Shown piece after piece: positions 20,387 through 25,472 of a stretch of 64,000 bases of DNA. Numbering within the stretch: position 1 is the stretch's first letter; each line of letters begins with the position of its first letter. Position numbers and translations under genes: made by a program. A model generated the notes under the pieces. It had not been told where the DNA came from. It did no database searches and saw nothing but the letters and a program-made list of their open reading frames with translations. The stretch comes from Vitrella brassicaformis CCMP3155 (lineage: Eukaryota; Protista; Chromerida): the NCBI GenBank assembly GCA_001179505.1, contig CDMY01000553.1, positions 124,001-188,000 of the forward strand. Reading direction: 5' to 3'.

Positions 20387-22148
20387 TCACCAGCCCGGCG
20401 TCCCGAATAGCTGTGTCAGATACCATGTGCCATCGCTTGAGCACGCCACCCCGATGCCGCACACAATGAATGGCCCGACGAGATTGCGACGGTGCCCCTC
20501 AGAATGGATCCACCCGTCCACTGCCGCCTTGGCCACCTGCACAAAGTAAATCGCCGAATTCATCCCTCCATCCATCCACTCAGACGGCCGGTCCCTCCCT
20601 CCCTCCTCACCCACCTCATAGATGCCCTTGTTGTGCGCCACGTTCTCAGCTGACCGCGACGACCGATATGGGTAAGACCGAAAACGCTGCTGGGCGCCCT
20701 GAACCAACACACACACACACACACACGATGGGGGCGAGCGTGTGTGTGTGTTTCTCTCTCTGTTGTGTGGGAGCTTGGCTTACGTCATGTCCGAATGGCA
20801 CTCTCCCCGCGGCCATGTTGCGGCTGTGGACCTCAGCAATGCGGCACAGCTCATCCGACCACACCAGCCCCGGAAGACCCAGACTCGCACGGTAGTCATT
20901 CGTGTAGTCGAGGGCCTGCTTGCCAATGTAGACTGGCTGGAAATCGAGTCTCCTGAAGTCGGCGAGCGTGCGGAAGGGGCCGTGCTCCCTCTTCATCTGC
21001 TCAGCATACCGGCCGTGCGACACGGGGGCGCGAGAGGGAGCTGAGACCACTCTCTGCTGCCGCACGGACGAAGGCTGGGCGGCAGGGGAGGGTGCGGCAG
21101 CAGGGGGGCGTGCACCGCCCGCAGCATCGAACCGCTCCTTTCGCTGTGAGCGGATGGCCATGAGCTGGTCCTCCTGCTCCTGCCGCGTCTTCTCCCGCTG
21201 CTGGTGCTCGCGCCGGGACGATTGGAAGGAGGACTTGACGGGGAGAGCAACTTGCCGGTCGATCTGGGTCCTCCGGGCTCGGTTGGTGCTCACGATGCGC
21301 TGCTCATGCAGTCTGGCCAGCTGGTCTCGCGTCGGCGCGCCCGTGAATGACGGCGCAGGGGCAGAGGGGTGGGTCTTGGTGGGAGAGGTGGACGCAGAGC
21401 GGTCTTGCGGTGACTCCTCTGGTGAAACCGCCGCCTTGGGAAGCGACTGCAGCAGCTCATCCAGCACCGTCTTCACCAGCCATACCTTGCCGAATGTGAG
21501 CTCGTCGTTGGGGTCGTCGATGGCCATCTCATCTTCGCCCTTCTCGTTGGTGCGCTGCTTCCAGCCGGCCGCCTCGAGCAGCGCACACGCAGGCGAGTGC
21601 CGCATGACGGCCTGCTGGATCTTGGGATTGCTGGTCTTGAACGAACGATACTTGAGGCTGTCGGGCTCTTTCAGCAAGTTCAGGTGCAGCCGCATGAGGA
21701 CAGAGCCACACTGCTGCCTATCTTCGATAGACTCGATGGCCGTGAGCGCATCCACGGCCTTGTAGATTTGCTCCTCCACTTGCACATCATCTTGGTCAGT
21801 CGGGGAAGACGGGGAGGCATCATTGCGGGTGTCATCAGCCGGTGCTGAAGGGCCGTCCTGTGTTGACTCGTGAGCGTCTTCCAGGACCACCGACGGTGGC
21901 TCCTCGCTGACGTGAGCTGTGGCAGATGGCGCAGAGAGCTCCAGCAGATGGTCCAGCATCACTTGAAGCGAGGGCGGAAACCTGTTGGTTTTCGTCGCCA
22001 CCTTGGTGAGCTCTTCCTCGATTGCGAGCGCAGACAGATGAGGGAAGAGGTCCTTCAGGACGGCGGGAGAAGCGTTGTCATCTTGGCTCTCGAGAAGAGA
22101 TGCGTCCGATGGAAGAGGCGGGGCGCTGGGTACTGGCAATTGGTTCAT
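20387..22148 (-). CDS. CUE-like + PUB + CAP/SCP (bacterial YkwD-type) domain fusion protein
   Basis: LKDLFPHLSALAIEEEL (CUE-like FP motif); VLMRLHLNLLKEPDSLKYRSFKTSNPKIQQAV..LLEAAGW (PUB); ALDYTNDYRASLGLPGLVWSDELCRIAEVHSRNMA..FGHDG..AENVA..AVDGWIHSEGHRRNLVG..CGIGV..YLTQLF (CAP). Two short introns lie in the CAP region. Confidence 0.85.
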
Positions 22149-22352
22149 AATCTGGGTAGCTCCTGAGAAACCGCAGTTCTGTCCCCAAAATAGTGCGAGC
22201 TGCCTTCTGGGGGCACAGCACTCCCCTCCCTCCCCTCCGGAGACTGAGGTCAAACAACGAATCCATACAGCTCGTCAAACAGCTCTCCCGTGAGTCCCAT
22301 TCTGATTCTTCTTGTTTGTTCAGGTCAATTTGGTTCAGGTCTTGTCGGCGTC
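22149..22352. promoter_or_regulatory. Putative bidirectional promoter between the CUE-PUB-CAP gene and the ZP-module gene
   Basis: Head-to-head ATGs at 22148 (-) and 22353 (+). Confidence 0.5.
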
Positions 22353-24095
22353 ATGCAAGCGCTCTCCCTTCTCGTTGGCCTCCTCCTCCCCTTGATCGTC
22401 GGTCCAGTGGGTGTGGCTGCCCAGCCGCTTACCGTGTCCGCCCGTACCATTTGTGGCAACGCCACCCATTCATTTCTCGGCGGCTGCTTCTCCGAGACTG
22501 ATACGATTCAGTGGCGGCTGGAGACCACCTGCGACGAGCCGCCCCTGTCGCTTCCTGGATCAACCCCTCCTGAGGTGTGCGTCGTTGCACCTCTGGAGGG
22601 CTGCGACACACAGAGGACATCCCGAGGCGATGGGTATCTCGGAGTCACGAACCTCGTCATCGGCGACAGCACGGAGTTTCGATACCCTCTCGAGTGCCTC
22701 TATGACCCAAATGGACAAGAGGTCCCGCTGCCGCGACAGGGCAAGGGCTTCGGCTGGACGGCGGGAGACAAGAGTGTGGCAGTGTATGCGAGTCTGTGTT
22801 CGGACTACCTTTGCAACGAGCCTCTCGACAACCCCATAACTATCAACTGCCCCCTTACAGACCAAGGTGGGCCCTTCGACTTTTGCCAATCGCTGGCTGA
22901 CAACGACAACGAGCCGTACAAGTGGGCCTACCTGCGGCTGAATGTCCCGGCCATGAACGACTCGCTCTTCATCCAGCCCCGCCAGTGCTACGCCACGCCG
23001 AGCGTGAGTGACGCCAGCCAGAAGGCCGTGCAGTGGCTCTTTGACGGCTGCAATGTCGACGTCTTGACGCTCCCCAACGGTGTCTCATGGCCAGTGTTGT
23101 ATCAAGTACACGCGGAGGGCCTGACGATGCTCAGATTTCCCGTGTTTCGGATGGGCACCTCCCCATCGATCGACTTCATCTACATCTACTGTGAAGTGGC
23201 GCTCTGCAACGGCCCCAACTGCCTCAATTGTCCTATCACAGTCGTCAACCAGACGACAACCGAAGGCATCTTCGTCGGCAACGTCGATCAGGCCGGCCAG
23301 CAGGGGACGCTCATCACCTCCCAGTTGTACAGCCAGCCCGTCAACAGCACTACCAGCTCTGGCGCAGAGAGCCAGCAGCTGGGCGTGGGGCCGCTAATCA
23401 TGCTGGGCGATGGGGGCCGGAAAGCAGAAGATGACGAGGGCAAGAGGGCCAAAACGACCGATTTGCAGAAGTCCCTCTCTGGCCCAGTGGCGCCCATCCT
23501 CTTTGTTCTCATCGGCGTTGCCTTGCTGACGGCCGTGTGCTTCCCGATCGTCAGGGGCATCCAGCTGAAGCGCGCGCAGAGGATCAAGTGCGCCAAGGAC
23601 AGGAACGAGAAGCCGGCGCAGGTGAAGCAAGCTGAGACTACCCTGGAGAAGCTCCGCGCCAAGCAGCGGCAGAAGATCGCCGCCCTCTCGCAACAACAGA
23701 CCACCGCCAGCCCAGAGGCATTGCAGGTGCCGATTTATGCGACAGAAGACAGGCTTGTCGGGGGCAGCATCCGATCAGGCGATGCAATGACTGAAGACCT
23801 GGATGCCGCGCTCAAGCGAGACGGCGGGGGGGTCATGACGCCATCACAGACGTACATCTTGGCGGACCACATTGTCGCATCGCCAGCGGCACAGAGCGCG
23901 GCGTCACCGAGTGGGCCAGAGCAGCATCCGATCACGGACGACAGTGAGGGGGAGAGGGCGGCTGGTCTGCGGCTGGACGGGATTGCTGTTGGCGTGAGAG
24001 CTTCGATCGCTTCGCTGTGGTCTACAGAGGCGAGACAGCGGTCGCCGAGTCATCGGGGTGGGGCCTCGCCCACACAGCGTGCGGACGACGTGTGA
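22353..24095 (+). CDS. Intronless type I membrane protein with signal peptide and zona pellucida (ZP-N + ZP-C)-like module
   Basis: Single ORF. Signal peptide MQALSLLVGLLLPLIVGPVGVAA; ZP-N-like APLEGCDT..TNLV..YPLECLY; ZP-C-like QCYATPS..WLFDGC..LRFPVFRM..IYIYCEVALC..C..C; EHP-like LGVGPLIM; TM helix PVAPILFVLIGVALLTAVCFPIV followed by basic residues. The CDS is secure; the domain call is by eye. Confidence 0.8.
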   Translation: MQALSLLVGLLLPLIVGPVGVAAQPLTVSARTICGNATHSFLGGCFSETDTIQWRLETTCDEPPLSLPGSTPPEVCVVAPLEGCDTQRTSRGDGYLGVTNLVIGDSTEFRYPLECLYDPNGQEVPLPRQGKGFGWTAGDKSVAVYASLCSDYLCNEPLDNPITINCPLTDQGGPFDFCQSLADNDNEPYKWAYLRLNVPAMNDSLFIQPRQCYATPSVSDASQKAVQWLFDGCNVDVLTLPNGVSWPVLYQVHAEGLTMLRFPVFRMGTSPSIDFIYIYCEVALCNGPNCLNCPITVVNQTTTEGIFVGNVDQAGQQGTLITSQLYSQPVNSTTSSGAESQQLGVGPLIMLGDGGRKAEDDEGKRAKTTDLQKSLSGPVAPILFVLIGVALLTAVCFPIVRGIQLKRAQRIKCAKDRNEKPAQVKQAETTLEKLRAKQRQKIAALSQQQTTASPEALQVPIYATEDRLVGGSIRSGDAMTEDLDAALKRDGGGVMTPSQTYILADHIVASPAAQSAASPSGPEQHPITDDSEGERAAGLRLDGIAVGVRASIASLWSTEARQRSPSHRGGASPTQRADDV

Positions 24096-24261
24096 AGTGC
24101 GGCTGGTGCGGTGTGTGTCCACGCTTTGAGTGCTTAATTGATGTGGCCAATGACCTTGAGACTTCTCGCTAATTGGCTTTTACATTGATCTAATTGATAA
24201 TACATAGCAGTCTTGATGCACGCATCACGCATCACGCACACATGGCTGCCTGGCTGGCTGC

Positions 24262-25472
24262 TCACCAGCTCAAGAAGCTCTTGCTCAACTTGTGATAGTT
24301 GACCCCGAAGTATGAGAAGAATCTGGGCCAGTCTCTCTCTGGGTTCGTGACTAACATTGTCCTCAGTTTGATCCGCATCTCCGCCTCCCTGACCTCTTGC
24401 GGTGTCATCCTGTCCTTCTGAATGGTTGCAGCCGACGCGTTGTACCTACATGTGCACAGGACAAGAGACAGACAGACAGACAGATAGACAGACAGGGAAT
24501 GTGAGCCCCGCTTCCGCGTGTGTATGAGCCATGCCTTGCCTGTGCCATGAGACGAGGAAGTCTCCGCCTTGTAGGTAGTTCACAAAGAGCCCACAGCCAA
24601 GCATGCCGGGCACCAGAGAATACTTTGAACCTTCGATGTTGGCCTTGAGAACGATGCGGTCGATGCCTCCCCTGGTCACCCGAGGGATGAAGTCGCACAG
24701 GTCGATGTTCTTGACATCTTCACAGGTGACATCCTTGCCGCCATTCAGCCTCTTGTCTGGCTCGATGCTGCTCCCGACACTCATATCCTTAATGACAAAG
24801 AGAGAGAGGCATCCATGTGTCGATAGATATCGGCCCACCTCGTAGCTGCCTTGCCAGAAGCCCTTCTCACGAAACGGCTCCGAGCAGAACCGAATGGTTC
24901 GTCGAGCGTCAAAAGCAGTAACAGCAGCAGGACAGAAGACCTCTATTTGGCCGCAGGCGCCCTCCAGCTGCTTGGCCACTTTCTGCAGAGGGCCACACAG
25001 CTCCCGGTTCCCTTCGAAGGCGTAGACGGTAACCTTCTTGTCGAAGCCCTTTTTGCCGACCAGACTTCGATAGAGACTCTGTAGTATGCGGGGCGAGTGT
25101 CTGGTCTTTCGTGAGAGCCTCTTCCTGATGTTGGCGGGGATCGGCGCCTCCTTTCCGCACTGAAAACACAAACGAGAAGCATCAATGAGAGAGGGCAGCG
25201 CATAGAGAAGGAGTGCTGACCATGTATGGAAAGCTGTCTCCTATGTTCGCTCCTAAGTCGAAGAACAGCACGCGGGGCGGGCCGCCCCTGACCGCTGAGC
25301 TCTTCTGCACTGAAGATCTCGGCGTGGCGGTCCGTTCCTCCTCCGTGTGGTGGCCCTGGTGTTGTGGGCGGCAGTCAAAAAGGCTTCTCCAGTTGCTGCG
25401 AACGGTGAATAGGGCAACAAGCGACGCGACCAGCACGCCCCCGAACGCGAGAGCACTTGCGAAGCCCGGCAT
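24262..25472 (-). CDS. FkbM-family SAM-dependent methyltransferase with an N-terminal membrane anchor; multi-exon
   Basis: N-terminal hydrophobic ALAFGGVLVASLVALFTV; SAM motif VLFFDLGANIGDS; VYAFEGN; IDLCDFI..RIVLKANIEGSKY; FLVSWH. Last exon YNASAA..KSFLSW*. Confidence 0.8.

What the first reader, a model, noticed from the sequence alone, without database searches (positions are those of the whole stretch)
22353..24095. Apparently complete zona pellucida (ZP) module protein outside animals
The layout follows animal ZP proteins: signal peptide; ZP-N-like region ending in PLxxCxT..N.V..C-x-Y (about 22452-22703); an IHP-like strand (VAVYASL); ZP-C-like CYATPS, FDGC, RFPVFR and IYCEVALC..C..C (to about 23231); EHP-like LGVGPLIM (about 23379-23402; cf. 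ZP3 VTVGPLIF); then a TM helix. ZP modules build polymeric egg coats, cuticles and tectorial membranes and are generally treated as metazoan. In an alga with walled sporangia and zoospores this could be an undescribed filament or coat system. The gene is intronless in an intron-dense genome, which fits retroposition or horizontal acquisition.
Basis: partly seen in the sequence, partly recalled or inferred. Interest (0 to 1): 0.9.

Follow-up and report, generated by a model that had tools for sequence, protein, structure and literature searches.

The report
ZP-module membrane protein in Vitrella alga
A single-celled alga related to malaria parasites (Vitrella brassicaformis) carries a native, intronless gene for a membrane protein whose outer part very probably is a complete "zona pellucida" module, the building block of animal egg coats that reviews still call animal-only, but it lacks the cleavage site animals use to switch on filament assembly.

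Summary
Window 22353-24095 (+) is one uninterrupted 580-codon ORF, identical to a public 580-aa protein. The genome matches Vitrella brassicaformis CCMP3155 exactly (72,700,666 bp, 1064 scaffolds).

The layout is signal peptide, ZP-N, IHP, ZP-C, Thr/Ser/Gln stalk, EHP-like strand, TM helix, then a 180-aa cytoplasmic tail.
- **ZP-C:** Pfam's model passes its gathering cut-off (27.3 vs 24.6 bits).
- **ZP-N:** supported by ESM Atlas features and model neighbours (only animal ZP-N families, TM up to 0.69) and by Pfam ZP-N hits in homologues.
- **Cysteines:** all ten canonical ZP cysteines (C1-C8, CysA, CysB) are present, plus two family-specific pairs.
- **Family:** two intron-containing paralogues (contigs C227, C272) and one Digyalum oweni transcript.
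- **Origin:** codon usage is native, so contamination or recent transfer is unlikely.

No family member has a conserved basic cleavage site between ZP-C and the EHP, so animal-style activation of polymerisation is unsupported. I prefer a membrane-retained surface protein.

Both AlphaFold2 runs failed (pLDDT 36-39).

The scan has already reported 11 other ZP-like modules on other DNA of this genome. This one is a further member, close to the canonical sequence pattern.

The parts
22353..24095 (+). Single-exon coding sequence, 580 codons plus stop; type I membrane glycoprotein (P0001)
   Evidence: identical over its full length to a public 580-aa protein model; an independent Logan contig is 100% collinear with window 21867-24495
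22353..22424 (+). Signal peptide (residues 1-24; hydrophobic core 4-23; likely cleavage after VAAQ)
   Evidence: sequence; all four family members start with an equivalent hydrophobic leader. No signal-peptide predictor was available, so this is an inference
22440..22736 (+). ZP-N domain (residues ~30-128). Six conserved Cys: C34 (C1), C60 (C2), C84 (C3, in PLEGC-DT), C115 (C4, in ECLY), plus a family-specific pair C45/C76
   Evidence: Atlas search of residues 26-140: best feature hits are ZP-N clusters (0.92), and all 10 structural rows are animal ZP-N proteins with TM 0.55-0.69. Pfam ZP-N hits the aligned region of the homologues P0002 and C272 (E 2-4e-4). Alignment
22773..22796 (+). IHP-like first strand of ZP-C (SVAVYASL, residues 141-148)
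   Evidence: position and hydrophobic alternation are conserved in all four members; the Atlas ZP-C alignments start at residue 141
22797..22814 (+). Family-specific C-x4-C pair directly after the IHP strand (C149, C154)
   Evidence: conserved in all four members. It resembles the lineage-specific IHP-stabilising or AB-loop disulfides described in nematode and fish ZP-C (PMC7456536). The pairing itself is inferred
22773..23237 (+). ZP-C domain (residues 141-295): C212 (C5, QCYATPS), C233 (C6, FDGC), C280 (C7), C285 (CysA), C290 (CysB), C293 (C8). An insertion specific to this paralogue carries C166/C178
   Evidence: Pfam PF00100 27.3 bits on the whole protein and 29.2 bits on the domain piece, against a cut-off of 24.6. 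Atlas search of residues 141-362: features 0.91, and all 10 structural rows are ZP-C proteins with TM 0.56-0.59 over 148-163 residues
23133..23156 (+). Motif at the position where I place the ZP-C FXF motif (RFPVFRMG; reads F-R-M here, FQF and FSF in two relatives)
   Evidence: alignment; role of FXF in uromodulin polymerisation from PMC7737619. The positional equivalence is my inference
23238..23378 (+). Thr/Gln/Ser-rich stalk of 49 residues with two N-glycosylation sequons (N299, N331) and no basic residue
23379..23402 (+). EHP-like strand LGVGPLIM (residues 343-350)
   Evidence: an equivalent G-P-(F/L)-(I/F) strand precedes the TM helix in P0002 and the C227 paralogue. The Atlas structural alignments of the ZP-C half run on to residues 354-362
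23415..23450 (+). Two dibasic sites (R356-K357, K364-R365) lying after the EHP-like strand and before the TM helix
   Evidence: Any cleavage here is hypothetical
23487..23552 (+). Transmembrane helix (residues 379-400) followed by a basic stop-transfer stretch
   Evidence: hydropathy maximum 2.87. AF2 gives a confident helix at 380-399, the only confident part of that model
23553..24092 (+). Cytoplasmic tail of 180 residues, rich in Ala/Arg/Ser/Gln, with no Pfam domain and no conservation among paralogues

Best explanation
This is a genuine, resident gene of Vitrella brassicaformis. It encodes a type I membrane glycoprotein whose whole ectodomain is one complete zona pellucida module, homologous to the ZP modules of animals.

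The module consists of ZP-N, a linker with an IHP strand, ZP-C with the C5, C6, C7, CysA, CysB, C8 cysteine set, and an EHP-like last strand. The gene belongs to a small family with three paralogues in Vitrella and one transcript in the gut parasite Digyalum oweni.

Likely mechanism (inferred, not shown):
- No family member has a conserved basic cleavage site between ZP-C and the EHP-like strand.
- All members keep a TM helix and a sizeable cytoplasmic tail.
- The EHP therefore most likely stays docked as the last strand of ZP-C.
- The protein would then remain a monomeric or dimeric cell-surface protein, acting as an adhesion or recognition receptor or as an anchor for wall or coat material. 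This resembles the membrane-retained ZP modules of betaglycan and endoglin more than the released filament subunits uromodulin and ZP3.
- If it is shed at the dibasic sites behind the EHP, the ectodomain would leave with its blocking strand still attached.

My confidence in the identity (a true ZP module, native gene) is about 0.85. My confidence in the membrane-retained, non-polymerising mechanism is about 0.45.
For: **Sequence profiles**
- Pfam ZP-C scores 27.3 to 29.2 bits, above the 24.6-bit gathering score.
- Each of the three relatives hits ZP-C at E 1-2e-4.
- Two relatives also hit Pfam ZP-N at E 2-4e-4, N-terminal to the ZP-C hit.
- Genome-wide, PF00100 rings only at these three loci, and at none in 14 control genomes.

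**Language model and ESMFold model**
- The whole ectodomain, the ZP-N half alone and the ZP-C half alone each retrieve animal ZP families. The two halves retrieve only those families.

**Cysteine framework**
- 14 Cys are conserved in all four members. They include the ten canonical positions, in the order described for ZP modules in PMC7456536.

**Native status**
- GC3 is 0.75 against 0.73 for the neighbouring gene. Codon-frequency r is 0.75-0.83 against 0.20 for an out-of-frame control.
- The gene lies on a 339-kb contig, and an independent contig is collinear with it.
- Six runs from three studies hold the stretch.
- The paralogues have GT-AG introns.

**Mechanism**
- There is no K or R from residue 267 to 355. 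Dibasic sites occur only after the EHP.
- The canonical switch needs cleavage between ZP-C and the EHP (PMC7737619).
- Betaglycan keeps the EHP in the stretch that joins ZP-C to the TM helix (PMC3695229).
Against: - Pfam ZP-N does not hit the window protein itself.
- Both AlphaFold2 models are unusable (pLDDT 39 and 36). Foldseek against the PDB gives nothing significant with them.
- The supporting ESMFold model has low confidence (pTM 0.37, mean pLDDT 0.45 for the whole protein). It is also not independent of the language-model features.
- Sequence searches against PDB chains are blank.
- Expression is untested here.
- The Digyalum transcript came from cells picked out of a mollusc gut, so host contamination is conceivable. 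However, its only detectable relatives are the Vitrella genes.
- Against the mechanism: proteases that do not need basic residues could still free the EHP, and membrane anchoring is itself a requirement of animal ZP polymerisation.
Confidence: 0.8

Rival explanations
1. The gene encodes a polymerising coat or wall precursor. The protein is cleaved between ZP-C and the EHP-like strand by a protease that does not need basic residues, for example a subtilisin-like enzyme. The EHP leaves, and the ectodomain assembles head-to-tail into filaments that contribute to the laminated cell or sporangium wall or to a zoospore coat, as animal ZP proteins do.
For: Every structural element needed apart from the cleavage site is present: IHP, a motif at the FXF position (true FXF in two relatives), an EHP-like strand, and a membrane anchor. 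Membrane anchoring is required for animal ZP polymerisation (PMC7737619). The 49-residue unstructured stalk before the EHP would be accessible to proteases.
Against: No conserved cleavage motif precedes the EHP in any of the four members. The cytoplasmic tails are long (about 75 to 180 residues). From my own knowledge, that is unlike the short tails or GPI anchors of animal polymerising precursors. The window protein reads F-R-M rather than FXF. There are no localisation or proteomic data.
Confidence: 0.28
2. This concerns origin and is compatible with the best explanation on structure. The family entered an ancestor of chromerids and squirmids by ancient horizontal transfer from an animal host. 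On this reading it does not descend from a pre-animal ZP module.
For: The distribution is patchy. An exhaustive phmmer search of 1.84 billion representatives found only the Digyalum protein. Digyalum lives in animals; from my own knowledge, Vitrella was isolated from a coral. The module has the complete canonical animal cysteine set, including CysA/CysB. The 2026 review finds only incomplete ZP-like domains in choanoflagellates.
Against: Codon usage is fully native and the paralogues carry introns, so any transfer would be very old. No animal protein reached E 0.001 in the exhaustive search. Earlier notes of this scan report further, more divergent ZP-like modules in this genome with relatives in Cryptosporidium, gregarines and Toxoplasma (I did not check this). 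That would fit long residence in the lineage.
Confidence: 0.3
3. The resemblance is convergent. The ectodomain is a cysteine-rich tandem of Ig-like beta-sandwiches that is not homologous to ZP modules, and the profile and language-model hits reflect composition and cysteine spacing.
For: Scores are modest: 27 bits for ZP-C and sub-threshold 21-22 bits in the relatives. No confident 3D model exists. PDB sequence searches are blank.
Against: Two different Pfam models hit in the right order in several members. All ten canonical Cys plus PLxxC-T, C-x-Y, C-(W/Y)-A, GC, the FXF position and a G-P-hydrophobic EHP are collinear with animal modules. Each half separately retrieves only ZP families, never other Ig-like families. 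PF00100 hits nothing else in 72.7 Mb.
Confidence: 0.08
4. The ORF is an artefact: animal DNA contaminating the assembly, a chimeric contig, or a spurious ORF.
For: No read-level check was possible. Expression of this gene was not shown here.
Against: GC3 and codon usage match the neighbouring PUB-CAP gene. The ORF is embedded in a 339-kb contig. An independent contig spans the ORF and both flanks at 100% identity. Runs from three studies hold it. Two diverged paralogues lie on other contigs. An intact 580-codon frame with domain hits is not expected from noise.
Confidence: 0.03

Closest known systems
Uromodulin-type ZP modules (UMOD, UMODL1, CUZD1, DMBT1, ZP2/ZP4)
   Same: They share ZP-N plus ZP-C with an IHP and an EHP as the last ZP-C strand, and a C-terminal membrane anchor. 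They also share the six-cysteine ZP-C set C5, C6, C7, CysA, CysB, C8 (PMC7456536). Here C7, CysA, CysB and C8 are C280, C285, C290 and C293. These families are the nearest structural neighbours of the Atlas model for both halves.
   Different: This protein has no consensus cleavage site before the EHP. It has no upstream EGF, D8C or CUB domains. It carries a TM helix plus a 180-residue cytoplasmic tail instead of a GPI anchor or short tail. It has two extra conserved cysteine pairs (C45/C76 in ZP-N, C149/C154 after the IHP). The organism is an alveolate alga.
Betaglycan (TGFBR3) and endoglin membrane-proximal ZP modules
   Same: Both are type I membrane proteins that keep the ZP module on the cell surface. 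In betaglycan the EHP lies in the stretch that joins ZP-C to the TM helix (PMC3695229), and the module serves ligand binding rather than filament formation. Betaglycan-type clusters give the longest Atlas alignment of the ZP-C half (163 residues).
   Different: Those receptors have a large ligand-binding orphan domain N-terminal to the ZP module. Endoglin lacks the C6-C8 and CysA-CysB disulfides. Here the ZP module is the whole ectodomain and keeps all ten cysteines. No ligand is known.
ZP3-type egg-coat subunits
   Same: The overall plan is signal peptide, ZP module, EHP, TM helix.
   Different: ZP3 has a furin-type site before the EHP and a ZP3-specific ZP-C subdomain with extra cysteines. 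It lacks CysA/CysB, which this protein has.
ZP-like domains of choanoflagellates (Salpingoeca rosetta), as treated in the 2026 review PMC13361971
   Same: They are ZP-related sequences outside animals.
   Different: The review describes them as lacking the full bipartite architecture and the invariant cysteine pattern. The Vitrella protein has both. It also comes from a different eukaryotic supergroup.
Other ZP-like modules noted by this scan in the same Vitrella genome (for example s1-239424, s1-226918, s1-201633)
   Same: They come from the same organism and show the same unexpected module. Two of the notes describe membrane proteins whose ectodomain is a ZP module, and these may be the C227 and C272 paralogues found here.
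   Different: Several of those are reported to have furin-type or RRRR sites and extra domains (unchecked). This gene is intronless, lacks such a site and passes the Pfam ZP-C threshold.

Membership tests
ZP module proteins (Pfam PF23344 ZP-N + PF00100 ZP-C) | ZP-C domain recognised by the family profile above the curated threshold | tested here: met
   PF00100 scores 27.3 bits (whole protein) and 29.2 bits (residues 140-380) against a cut-off of 24.6, covering profile positions 35-129 of 133
ZP module proteins (Pfam PF23344 ZP-N + PF00100 ZP-C) | ZP-N domain directly N-terminal to ZP-C (bipartite architecture) | tested here: met
   Pfam ZP-N does not hit the window protein. It does hit the aligned region of two homologues (21.3 and 21.8 bits, E 2-4e-4, below the 24.7 cut-off). 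Residues 26-140 alone retrieve ZP-N clusters by features (0.92) and only ZP-N proteins by Atlas structure (TM 0.55-0.69). The motifs PLEGC-DT and EC-L-Y are at the expected places. The feature is met on combined evidence, not on the Pfam threshold
ZP module proteins (Pfam PF23344 ZP-N + PF00100 ZP-C) | Conserved cysteines C1-C4 in ZP-N and C5-C8 (plus CysA/CysB) in ZP-C | tested here: met
   C34, C60, C84, C115 and C212, C233, C280, C285, C290, C293 are conserved in all four family members, in canonical order (definitions from PMC7456536, and PMC13361971)
ZP module proteins (Pfam PF23344 ZP-N + PF00100 ZP-C) | Disulfide connectivity C1-C4, C2-C3, C5-C7, C6-C8, CysA-CysB | not testable with these tools
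   No confident 3D model was obtained. This needs mass-spectrometric mapping or a solved structure
ZP module proteins (Pfam PF23344 ZP-N + PF00100 ZP-C) | Fold: two ZP-type immunoglobulin-like beta-sandwiches | tested here: inconclusive
   AlphaFold2 gave pLDDT 39 and 36, and Foldseek against the PDB gave a best E of 0.4. The ESM Atlas's own low-confidence model (pTM 0.37) has only ZP-N and ZP-C neighbours for the two halves
ZP module proteins (Pfam PF23344 ZP-N + PF00100 ZP-C) | Internal and external hydrophobic patches (IHP as the first strand of ZP-C, EHP as the last) | tested here: met
   SVAVYASL (141-148) and LGVGPLIM (343-350) have conserved counterparts in the relatives. The Atlas ZP-C alignments span 141 to 354-362. 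This is evidence at the level of sequence and predicted model only
Polymerising ZP precursors (uromodulin / ZP1-4 type) | Consensus (furin or hepsin type) cleavage site between ZP-C and the EHP | tested here: not met
   There is no K or R between R266 and R356. None is conserved at this place in the three relatives either. The dibasic sites lie after the EHP. The requirement is taken from PMC7737619
Polymerising ZP precursors (uromodulin / ZP1-4 type) | C-terminal membrane anchor downstream of the EHP | tested here: met
   TM helix at 379-400 with a basic stop-transfer stretch
Polymerising ZP precursors (uromodulin / ZP1-4 type) | FXF motif in ZP-C | tested here: inconclusive
   At the position I align with FXF, the window protein reads F-R-M, P0002 FQF, C227 FSF and C272 FRL. 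The motif's role is from PMC7737619. The positional equivalence is my inference
Polymerising ZP precursors (uromodulin / ZP1-4 type) | Demonstrated assembly into filaments or a matrix | not testable with these tools
   This needs cell-based or in-vitro polymerisation assays and localisation
Membrane-retained ZP co-receptors (betaglycan / endoglin type) | TM helix and cytoplasmic tail, with the EHP retained between ZP-C and the TM helix and no processing site before it | tested here: met
   betaglycan layout from PMC3695229
Membrane-retained ZP co-receptors (betaglycan / endoglin type) | Large N-terminal orphan (ligand-binding) domain, and orthology to TGF-beta co-receptors | tested here: not met
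   ZP-N starts about six residues after the signal peptide, and there is no other domain. The protein may work like these receptors but is not a member of that family

The most novel reading that the evidence does not exclude
The complete, canonical ZP module (ten cysteines, IHP, EHP, membrane anchor) is not an animal invention. On this reading it was already present in the common ancestor of chromerids, squirmids and apicomplexans, either by descent from an early eukaryotic module or by very old exchange with animals. In Vitrella this family would use a cleavage-independent or non-furin switch to assemble an extracellular coat on the cell or sporangium wall or on zoospores. That would be a second, independently regulated ZP polymer system outside Metazoa.
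Probability: 0.25. Interest if true: 0.88.

Novelty: new variant of a known kind. Interest (0 to 1): 0.68.

Why it matters
A 2026 review (PMC13361971) defines the canonical ZP module as a metazoan synapomorphy and accepts only incomplete ZP-like domains in choanoflagellates. The library held no paper that mentions zona pellucida together with Vitrella or Chromera. The 14 papers that mention it together with apicomplexans appear unrelated to ZP modules in alveolates (judged from titles and abstracts; I read one).

A sequence-canonical ZP module in a free-living relative of apicomplexan parasites would have several consequences.
- It would move the origin or spread of this module outside animals.
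- It would provide a natural variant without the cleavage switch, useful for asking what the EHP does when it is not released.
- It would give a candidate surface or wall component in chromerids, and by extension in parasites with oocyst or cyst walls.

The database annotation (a precomputed PF00100 hit on the public protein) shows that the hit has been sitting in public data without being discussed.

Tried and rejected
**Structure prediction**
- AlphaFold2 on the window ectodomain with an 8-row family alignment gave pLDDT 39. On the Digyalum ectodomain with a 6-row alignment it gave pLDDT 36. Both models are unusable because the alignments are too shallow.
- Foldseek of both models against the PDB gave a best E of about 0.4. 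ZP entries (endoglin 5hzv, uromodulin 7pfp/6zya/6tql, ZPD 28yj) appeared only among the noise. I count this as no evidence either way.

**Sequence searches**
- phmmer and a family profile against PDB sequences found no ZP hit.
- Three word-indexed homologue searches returned only the query itself. The exhaustive phmmer search added only the Digyalum protein. It did not list the two Vitrella paralogues either, so its blank for other taxa is weak evidence.
- The family alignment was too divergent for a pattern scan of metagenomes. Single-protein scans of metagenomes found nothing.

**Reads and expression**
No read depth, splice or expression evidence could be obtained.
- The listed runs are of unknown kind, so they do not show expression.
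- I could not tell whether the 2.6-kb Logan contig is RNA or DNA. It ends in a GACA repeat.

**Not run**

**Readings rejected**
- Recent horizontal transfer or contamination, because of native codon usage and intron-bearing paralogues.
- A TRAP/MIC2-type adhesin reading of the cytoplasmic tail, because I see no conserved motif (own inspection only).
Full report
**1. The observation**

Window 22353-24095 (+) is a single open frame of 580 codons. Its translation is identical over its full length to a public 580-aa protein that sits on a 339-kb contig and already carries a precomputed PF00100 hit (P0001).

- signal-peptide core, residues 4-23
- C34
- PLEGCDT, 80-86
- LECLYD, 113-118
- SVAVYASL, 141-148
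- QCYATPS, 211-217
- LFDGC, 229-233
- RFPVFRMG, 261-268
- IYCEVALCNGPNCLNC, 278-293
- LGVGPLIM, 343-350
- a TM helix at 379-400, followed by a basic stretch

**2. The organism**

The window's assembly has 72,700,666 bases in 1064 contigs. The chromerid genome paper gives exactly these numbers for Vitrella brassicaformis CCMP3155 (PMC4501334). That paper's main text does not contain the word "zona".

**3. Is it a ZP module?**

I used three kinds of evidence.

(a) Curated profiles.
- Pfam ZP-C (PF00100) scores 27.3 bits on the whole protein and 29.2 bits on residues 140-380. Both are above the 24.6-bit gathering score, at E 4e-6 to 1e-6.
- The window protein's ZP-N half is not hit by Pfam ZP-N (PF23344). 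Its homologues are, however. The Digyalum protein P0002 scores 21.3 bits (E 3.5e-4). The main exon of the C272 paralogue scores 21.8 bits (E 2.4e-4).
- In both cases the ZP-N hit lies N-terminal to a ZP-C hit of about 22 bits. The second exon of the C227 paralogue also hits ZP-C, at 21.8 bits.
- In a six-frame scan of the whole genome, PF00100 matches only these three loci. It matches nothing in 14 control genomes. PF23344 matches only C272.

(b) Language-model features and the ESM Atlas's own ESMFold model of this exact protein.
- The 400-residue ectodomain has animal ZP clusters as its nearest neighbours (0.92).
- Residues 26-140 alone retrieve ZP-N clusters by features (0.92). By structure they retrieve only ZP-N-bearing animal proteins, with TM 0.55-0.69 over 89-107 aligned residues.
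- Residues 141-362 alone retrieve ZP-C clusters by features (0.91). By structure they retrieve only ZP-C-bearing proteins, with TM 0.56-0.59 over 148-163 aligned residues. The alignments run on to residues 354-362, beyond the EHP-like strand.
- The Atlas model is of low confidence (pTM 0.37, mean pLDDT 0.45 for the whole protein, including the long tail). Features and structure count as one source of evidence.

(c) The cysteine framework. In an alignment of the four family members, 14 cysteines are conserved in all four.
- ZP-N: C34, C45, C60, C76, C84, C115.
- Directly after the IHP strand: C149, C154.
- ZP-C: C212, C233, C280, C285, C290, C293.

The published canonical set is C1-C4 and C2-C3 in ZP-N, and C5-C7, C6-C8 and CysA-CysB in ZP-C (PMC7456536).
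- That set maps onto C34, C60, C84 and C115, and onto C212, C233, C280, C285, C290 and C293.
- This mapping is my assignment from order and sequence context.
- C45/C76 and C149/C154 are then family-specific extra pairs. The second pair recalls the lineage-specific IHP-stabilising or AB-loop disulfides of nematodes and fish.
- C166/C178 lie in an insertion found only in the window protein.

Taken together, I put the probability of a true, complete ZP module at about 0.85.

**4. What could not be shown**
- Both AlphaFold2 jobs failed for lack of alignment depth (pLDDT 39 and 36).
- Foldseek of those models against the PDB is not significant.
- PDB sequence searches are blank.
- The fold and the disulfide connectivity therefore remain predictions.

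**5. The family and native status**

Relatives in the same genome:
- Own-genome searches with the protein, with P0002 and with a family profile find two further loci.
- C227 (minus strand) has two exons joined by a 71-nt GTAAGT...AG phase-0 intron inside ZP-C. It has its own signal peptide, an EHP-like FGPFFIT and a TM helix.
- C272 (minus strand) has at least five exons, with one intron placed between C7 and CysA.

The one relative elsewhere:
- The only relative detected in 1.84 billion representative proteins is P0002 (E 6e-4). It is a 385-aa complete ORF from the EukProt transcriptome of Digyalum oweni.
- It has the same layout and matches C272 at E 6e-21 to 7e-22.
- Digyalum is a gut parasite of Littorina and branches outside Apicomplexa in the strict sense (PMC6733595).
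- Host contamination of that transcriptome is conceivable. However, a word-based search with P0002 found no other relative at all.

Evidence that the window gene is native:
- Its composition matches the genome. GC3 is 0.75 against 0.73 in the divergently oriented PUB-CAP neighbour and 0.80-0.87 in the paralogues.
- Codon-frequency correlation is 0.75-0.83, against 0.20 for an out-of-frame control.
- An independent Logan contig from run ERR558149 is 100% identical and collinear with window 21867-24495.
- Six runs from three studies hold the stretch.
- Contamination, chimerism and recent transfer are therefore unlikely.

The gene is the only intronless member of an intron-bearing family. That fits an old retroposition, but I saw no poly(A) remnant. 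At 24-30% identity to its paralogues, the duplication is ancient.

**6. The mechanism**

In animal polymerising ZP proteins, a protease cuts a consensus site between ZP-C and the EHP. The EHP then leaves, and the module is incorporated head-to-tail into filaments at the membrane. The FXF motif of ZP-C and membrane anchoring are both required (PMC7737619).

Here the 49-residue Thr/Gln/Ser-rich stalk between C293 and the EHP-like strand has two N-glycosylation sequons and no basic residue. There is no K or R from residue 267 to 355. None of the three relatives has a conserved basic site at this place either. Dibasic sites (RK 356-357, KR 364-365) occur only after the EHP-like strand.

At the position I align with FXF, the window protein reads F-R-M, while two relatives read FQF and FSF. 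All members keep a TM helix and a cytoplasmic tail. In the window protein the tail is 180 residues, has no domain and is not conserved.

The layout therefore resembles betaglycan, where the EHP lies in the stretch that joins ZP-C to the TM helix and the module binds ligands rather than polymerising (PMC3695229).

My preferred reading (about 0.45) is a membrane-retained surface ZP protein that acts in adhesion, recognition or matrix anchoring. The rival (about 0.28) is a coat or wall precursor activated by a protease that does not need basic residues. Neither has been tested.

**7. Comparison with what is known, and novelty**

A 2026 review defines the canonical module as a metazoan synapomorphy, marked by bipartite architecture, eight invariant cysteines and polymerisation. 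It treats choanoflagellate ZP-like domains as incomplete (PMC13361971).

The library held no paper that mentions zona pellucida together with Vitrella or Chromera. The 14 papers that mention it with "apicomplexan" appear unrelated, judged from their titles and abstracts. I read one of them, and it concerns a GO term, not a ZP module.

The Vitrella protein meets the first two criteria of that definition. The third is untested, and the cleavage switch is missing. I therefore class it as a new variant of a known kind.

This scan has already noted 11 other ZP-like modules on other DNA of this genome. Two of them are membrane proteins that may be the paralogues found here. Those notes are unchecked by me, except for the review's wording.

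**8. Limits**
- Expression was not tested. 

Noticed in passing
G000:C227 (L007:4463-5901, minus strand): This is a paralogue with a signal peptide, a full ZP-like cysteine framework, an EHP-like FGPFFIT, a TM helix and a ~110-residue tail. It has two exons joined by a 71-nt GTAAGT...AG phase-0 intron between C5 and C6 of ZP-C. Pfam ZP-C scores 21.8 bits on exon 2.
   Followed up: partly
G000:C272 (L006:7300-8838, minus strand): This is a paralogue with at least five exons, and it is the closest Vitrella relative of the Digyalum protein (E about 1e-21). Its main exon hits both Pfam ZP-N (21.8 bits) and ZP-C (22.4 bits). One intron falls between C7 and CysA. I did not verify the splice junctions with RNA.
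   Followed up: partly
P0002 (EukProt EP00916, Digyalum oweni, 385 aa): This is a complete SP, ZP-N, ZP-C, EHP-like (LGPFIL), TM protein from a gut parasite of periwinkles. It is the only relative outside Vitrella found in 1.84 billion representatives. Host (mollusc) contamination is not formally excluded.
   Followed up: partly
window 20649-22148 (-): The divergently oriented upstream neighbour has Pfam PUB (35.7 bits) and CAP (32.8 bits) domains in one open frame, as another first-stage note on this window says. Its open frame runs up to about 100-200 bp from the ZP gene's ATG.
   Followed up: partly
window 22842-22970 (residues ~164-206): This is an insertion specific to the window paralogue. 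It holds an extra cysteine pair (C166, C178) and a ~20-residue stretch, absent from the three relatives, that carries an N-glycosylation sequon (N202).
   Followed up: no
window ~24465-24495: A GACA/GATA simple repeat lies about 400 bp downstream of the stop codon, and the independent Logan contig ends there. The 241-codon open frame on the minus strand at 24449-25171 has no Pfam hit.
   Followed up: no
   Followed up: no
Atlas feature search of window:22353-23552 (rank 16): A cluster of 183 hypothetical proteins, commonest in diatoms (Bacillariophyta), scores 0.88 next to the animal ZP clusters. This is a weak lead that ZP-like ectodomains may exist in other algal groups.
   Followed up: no
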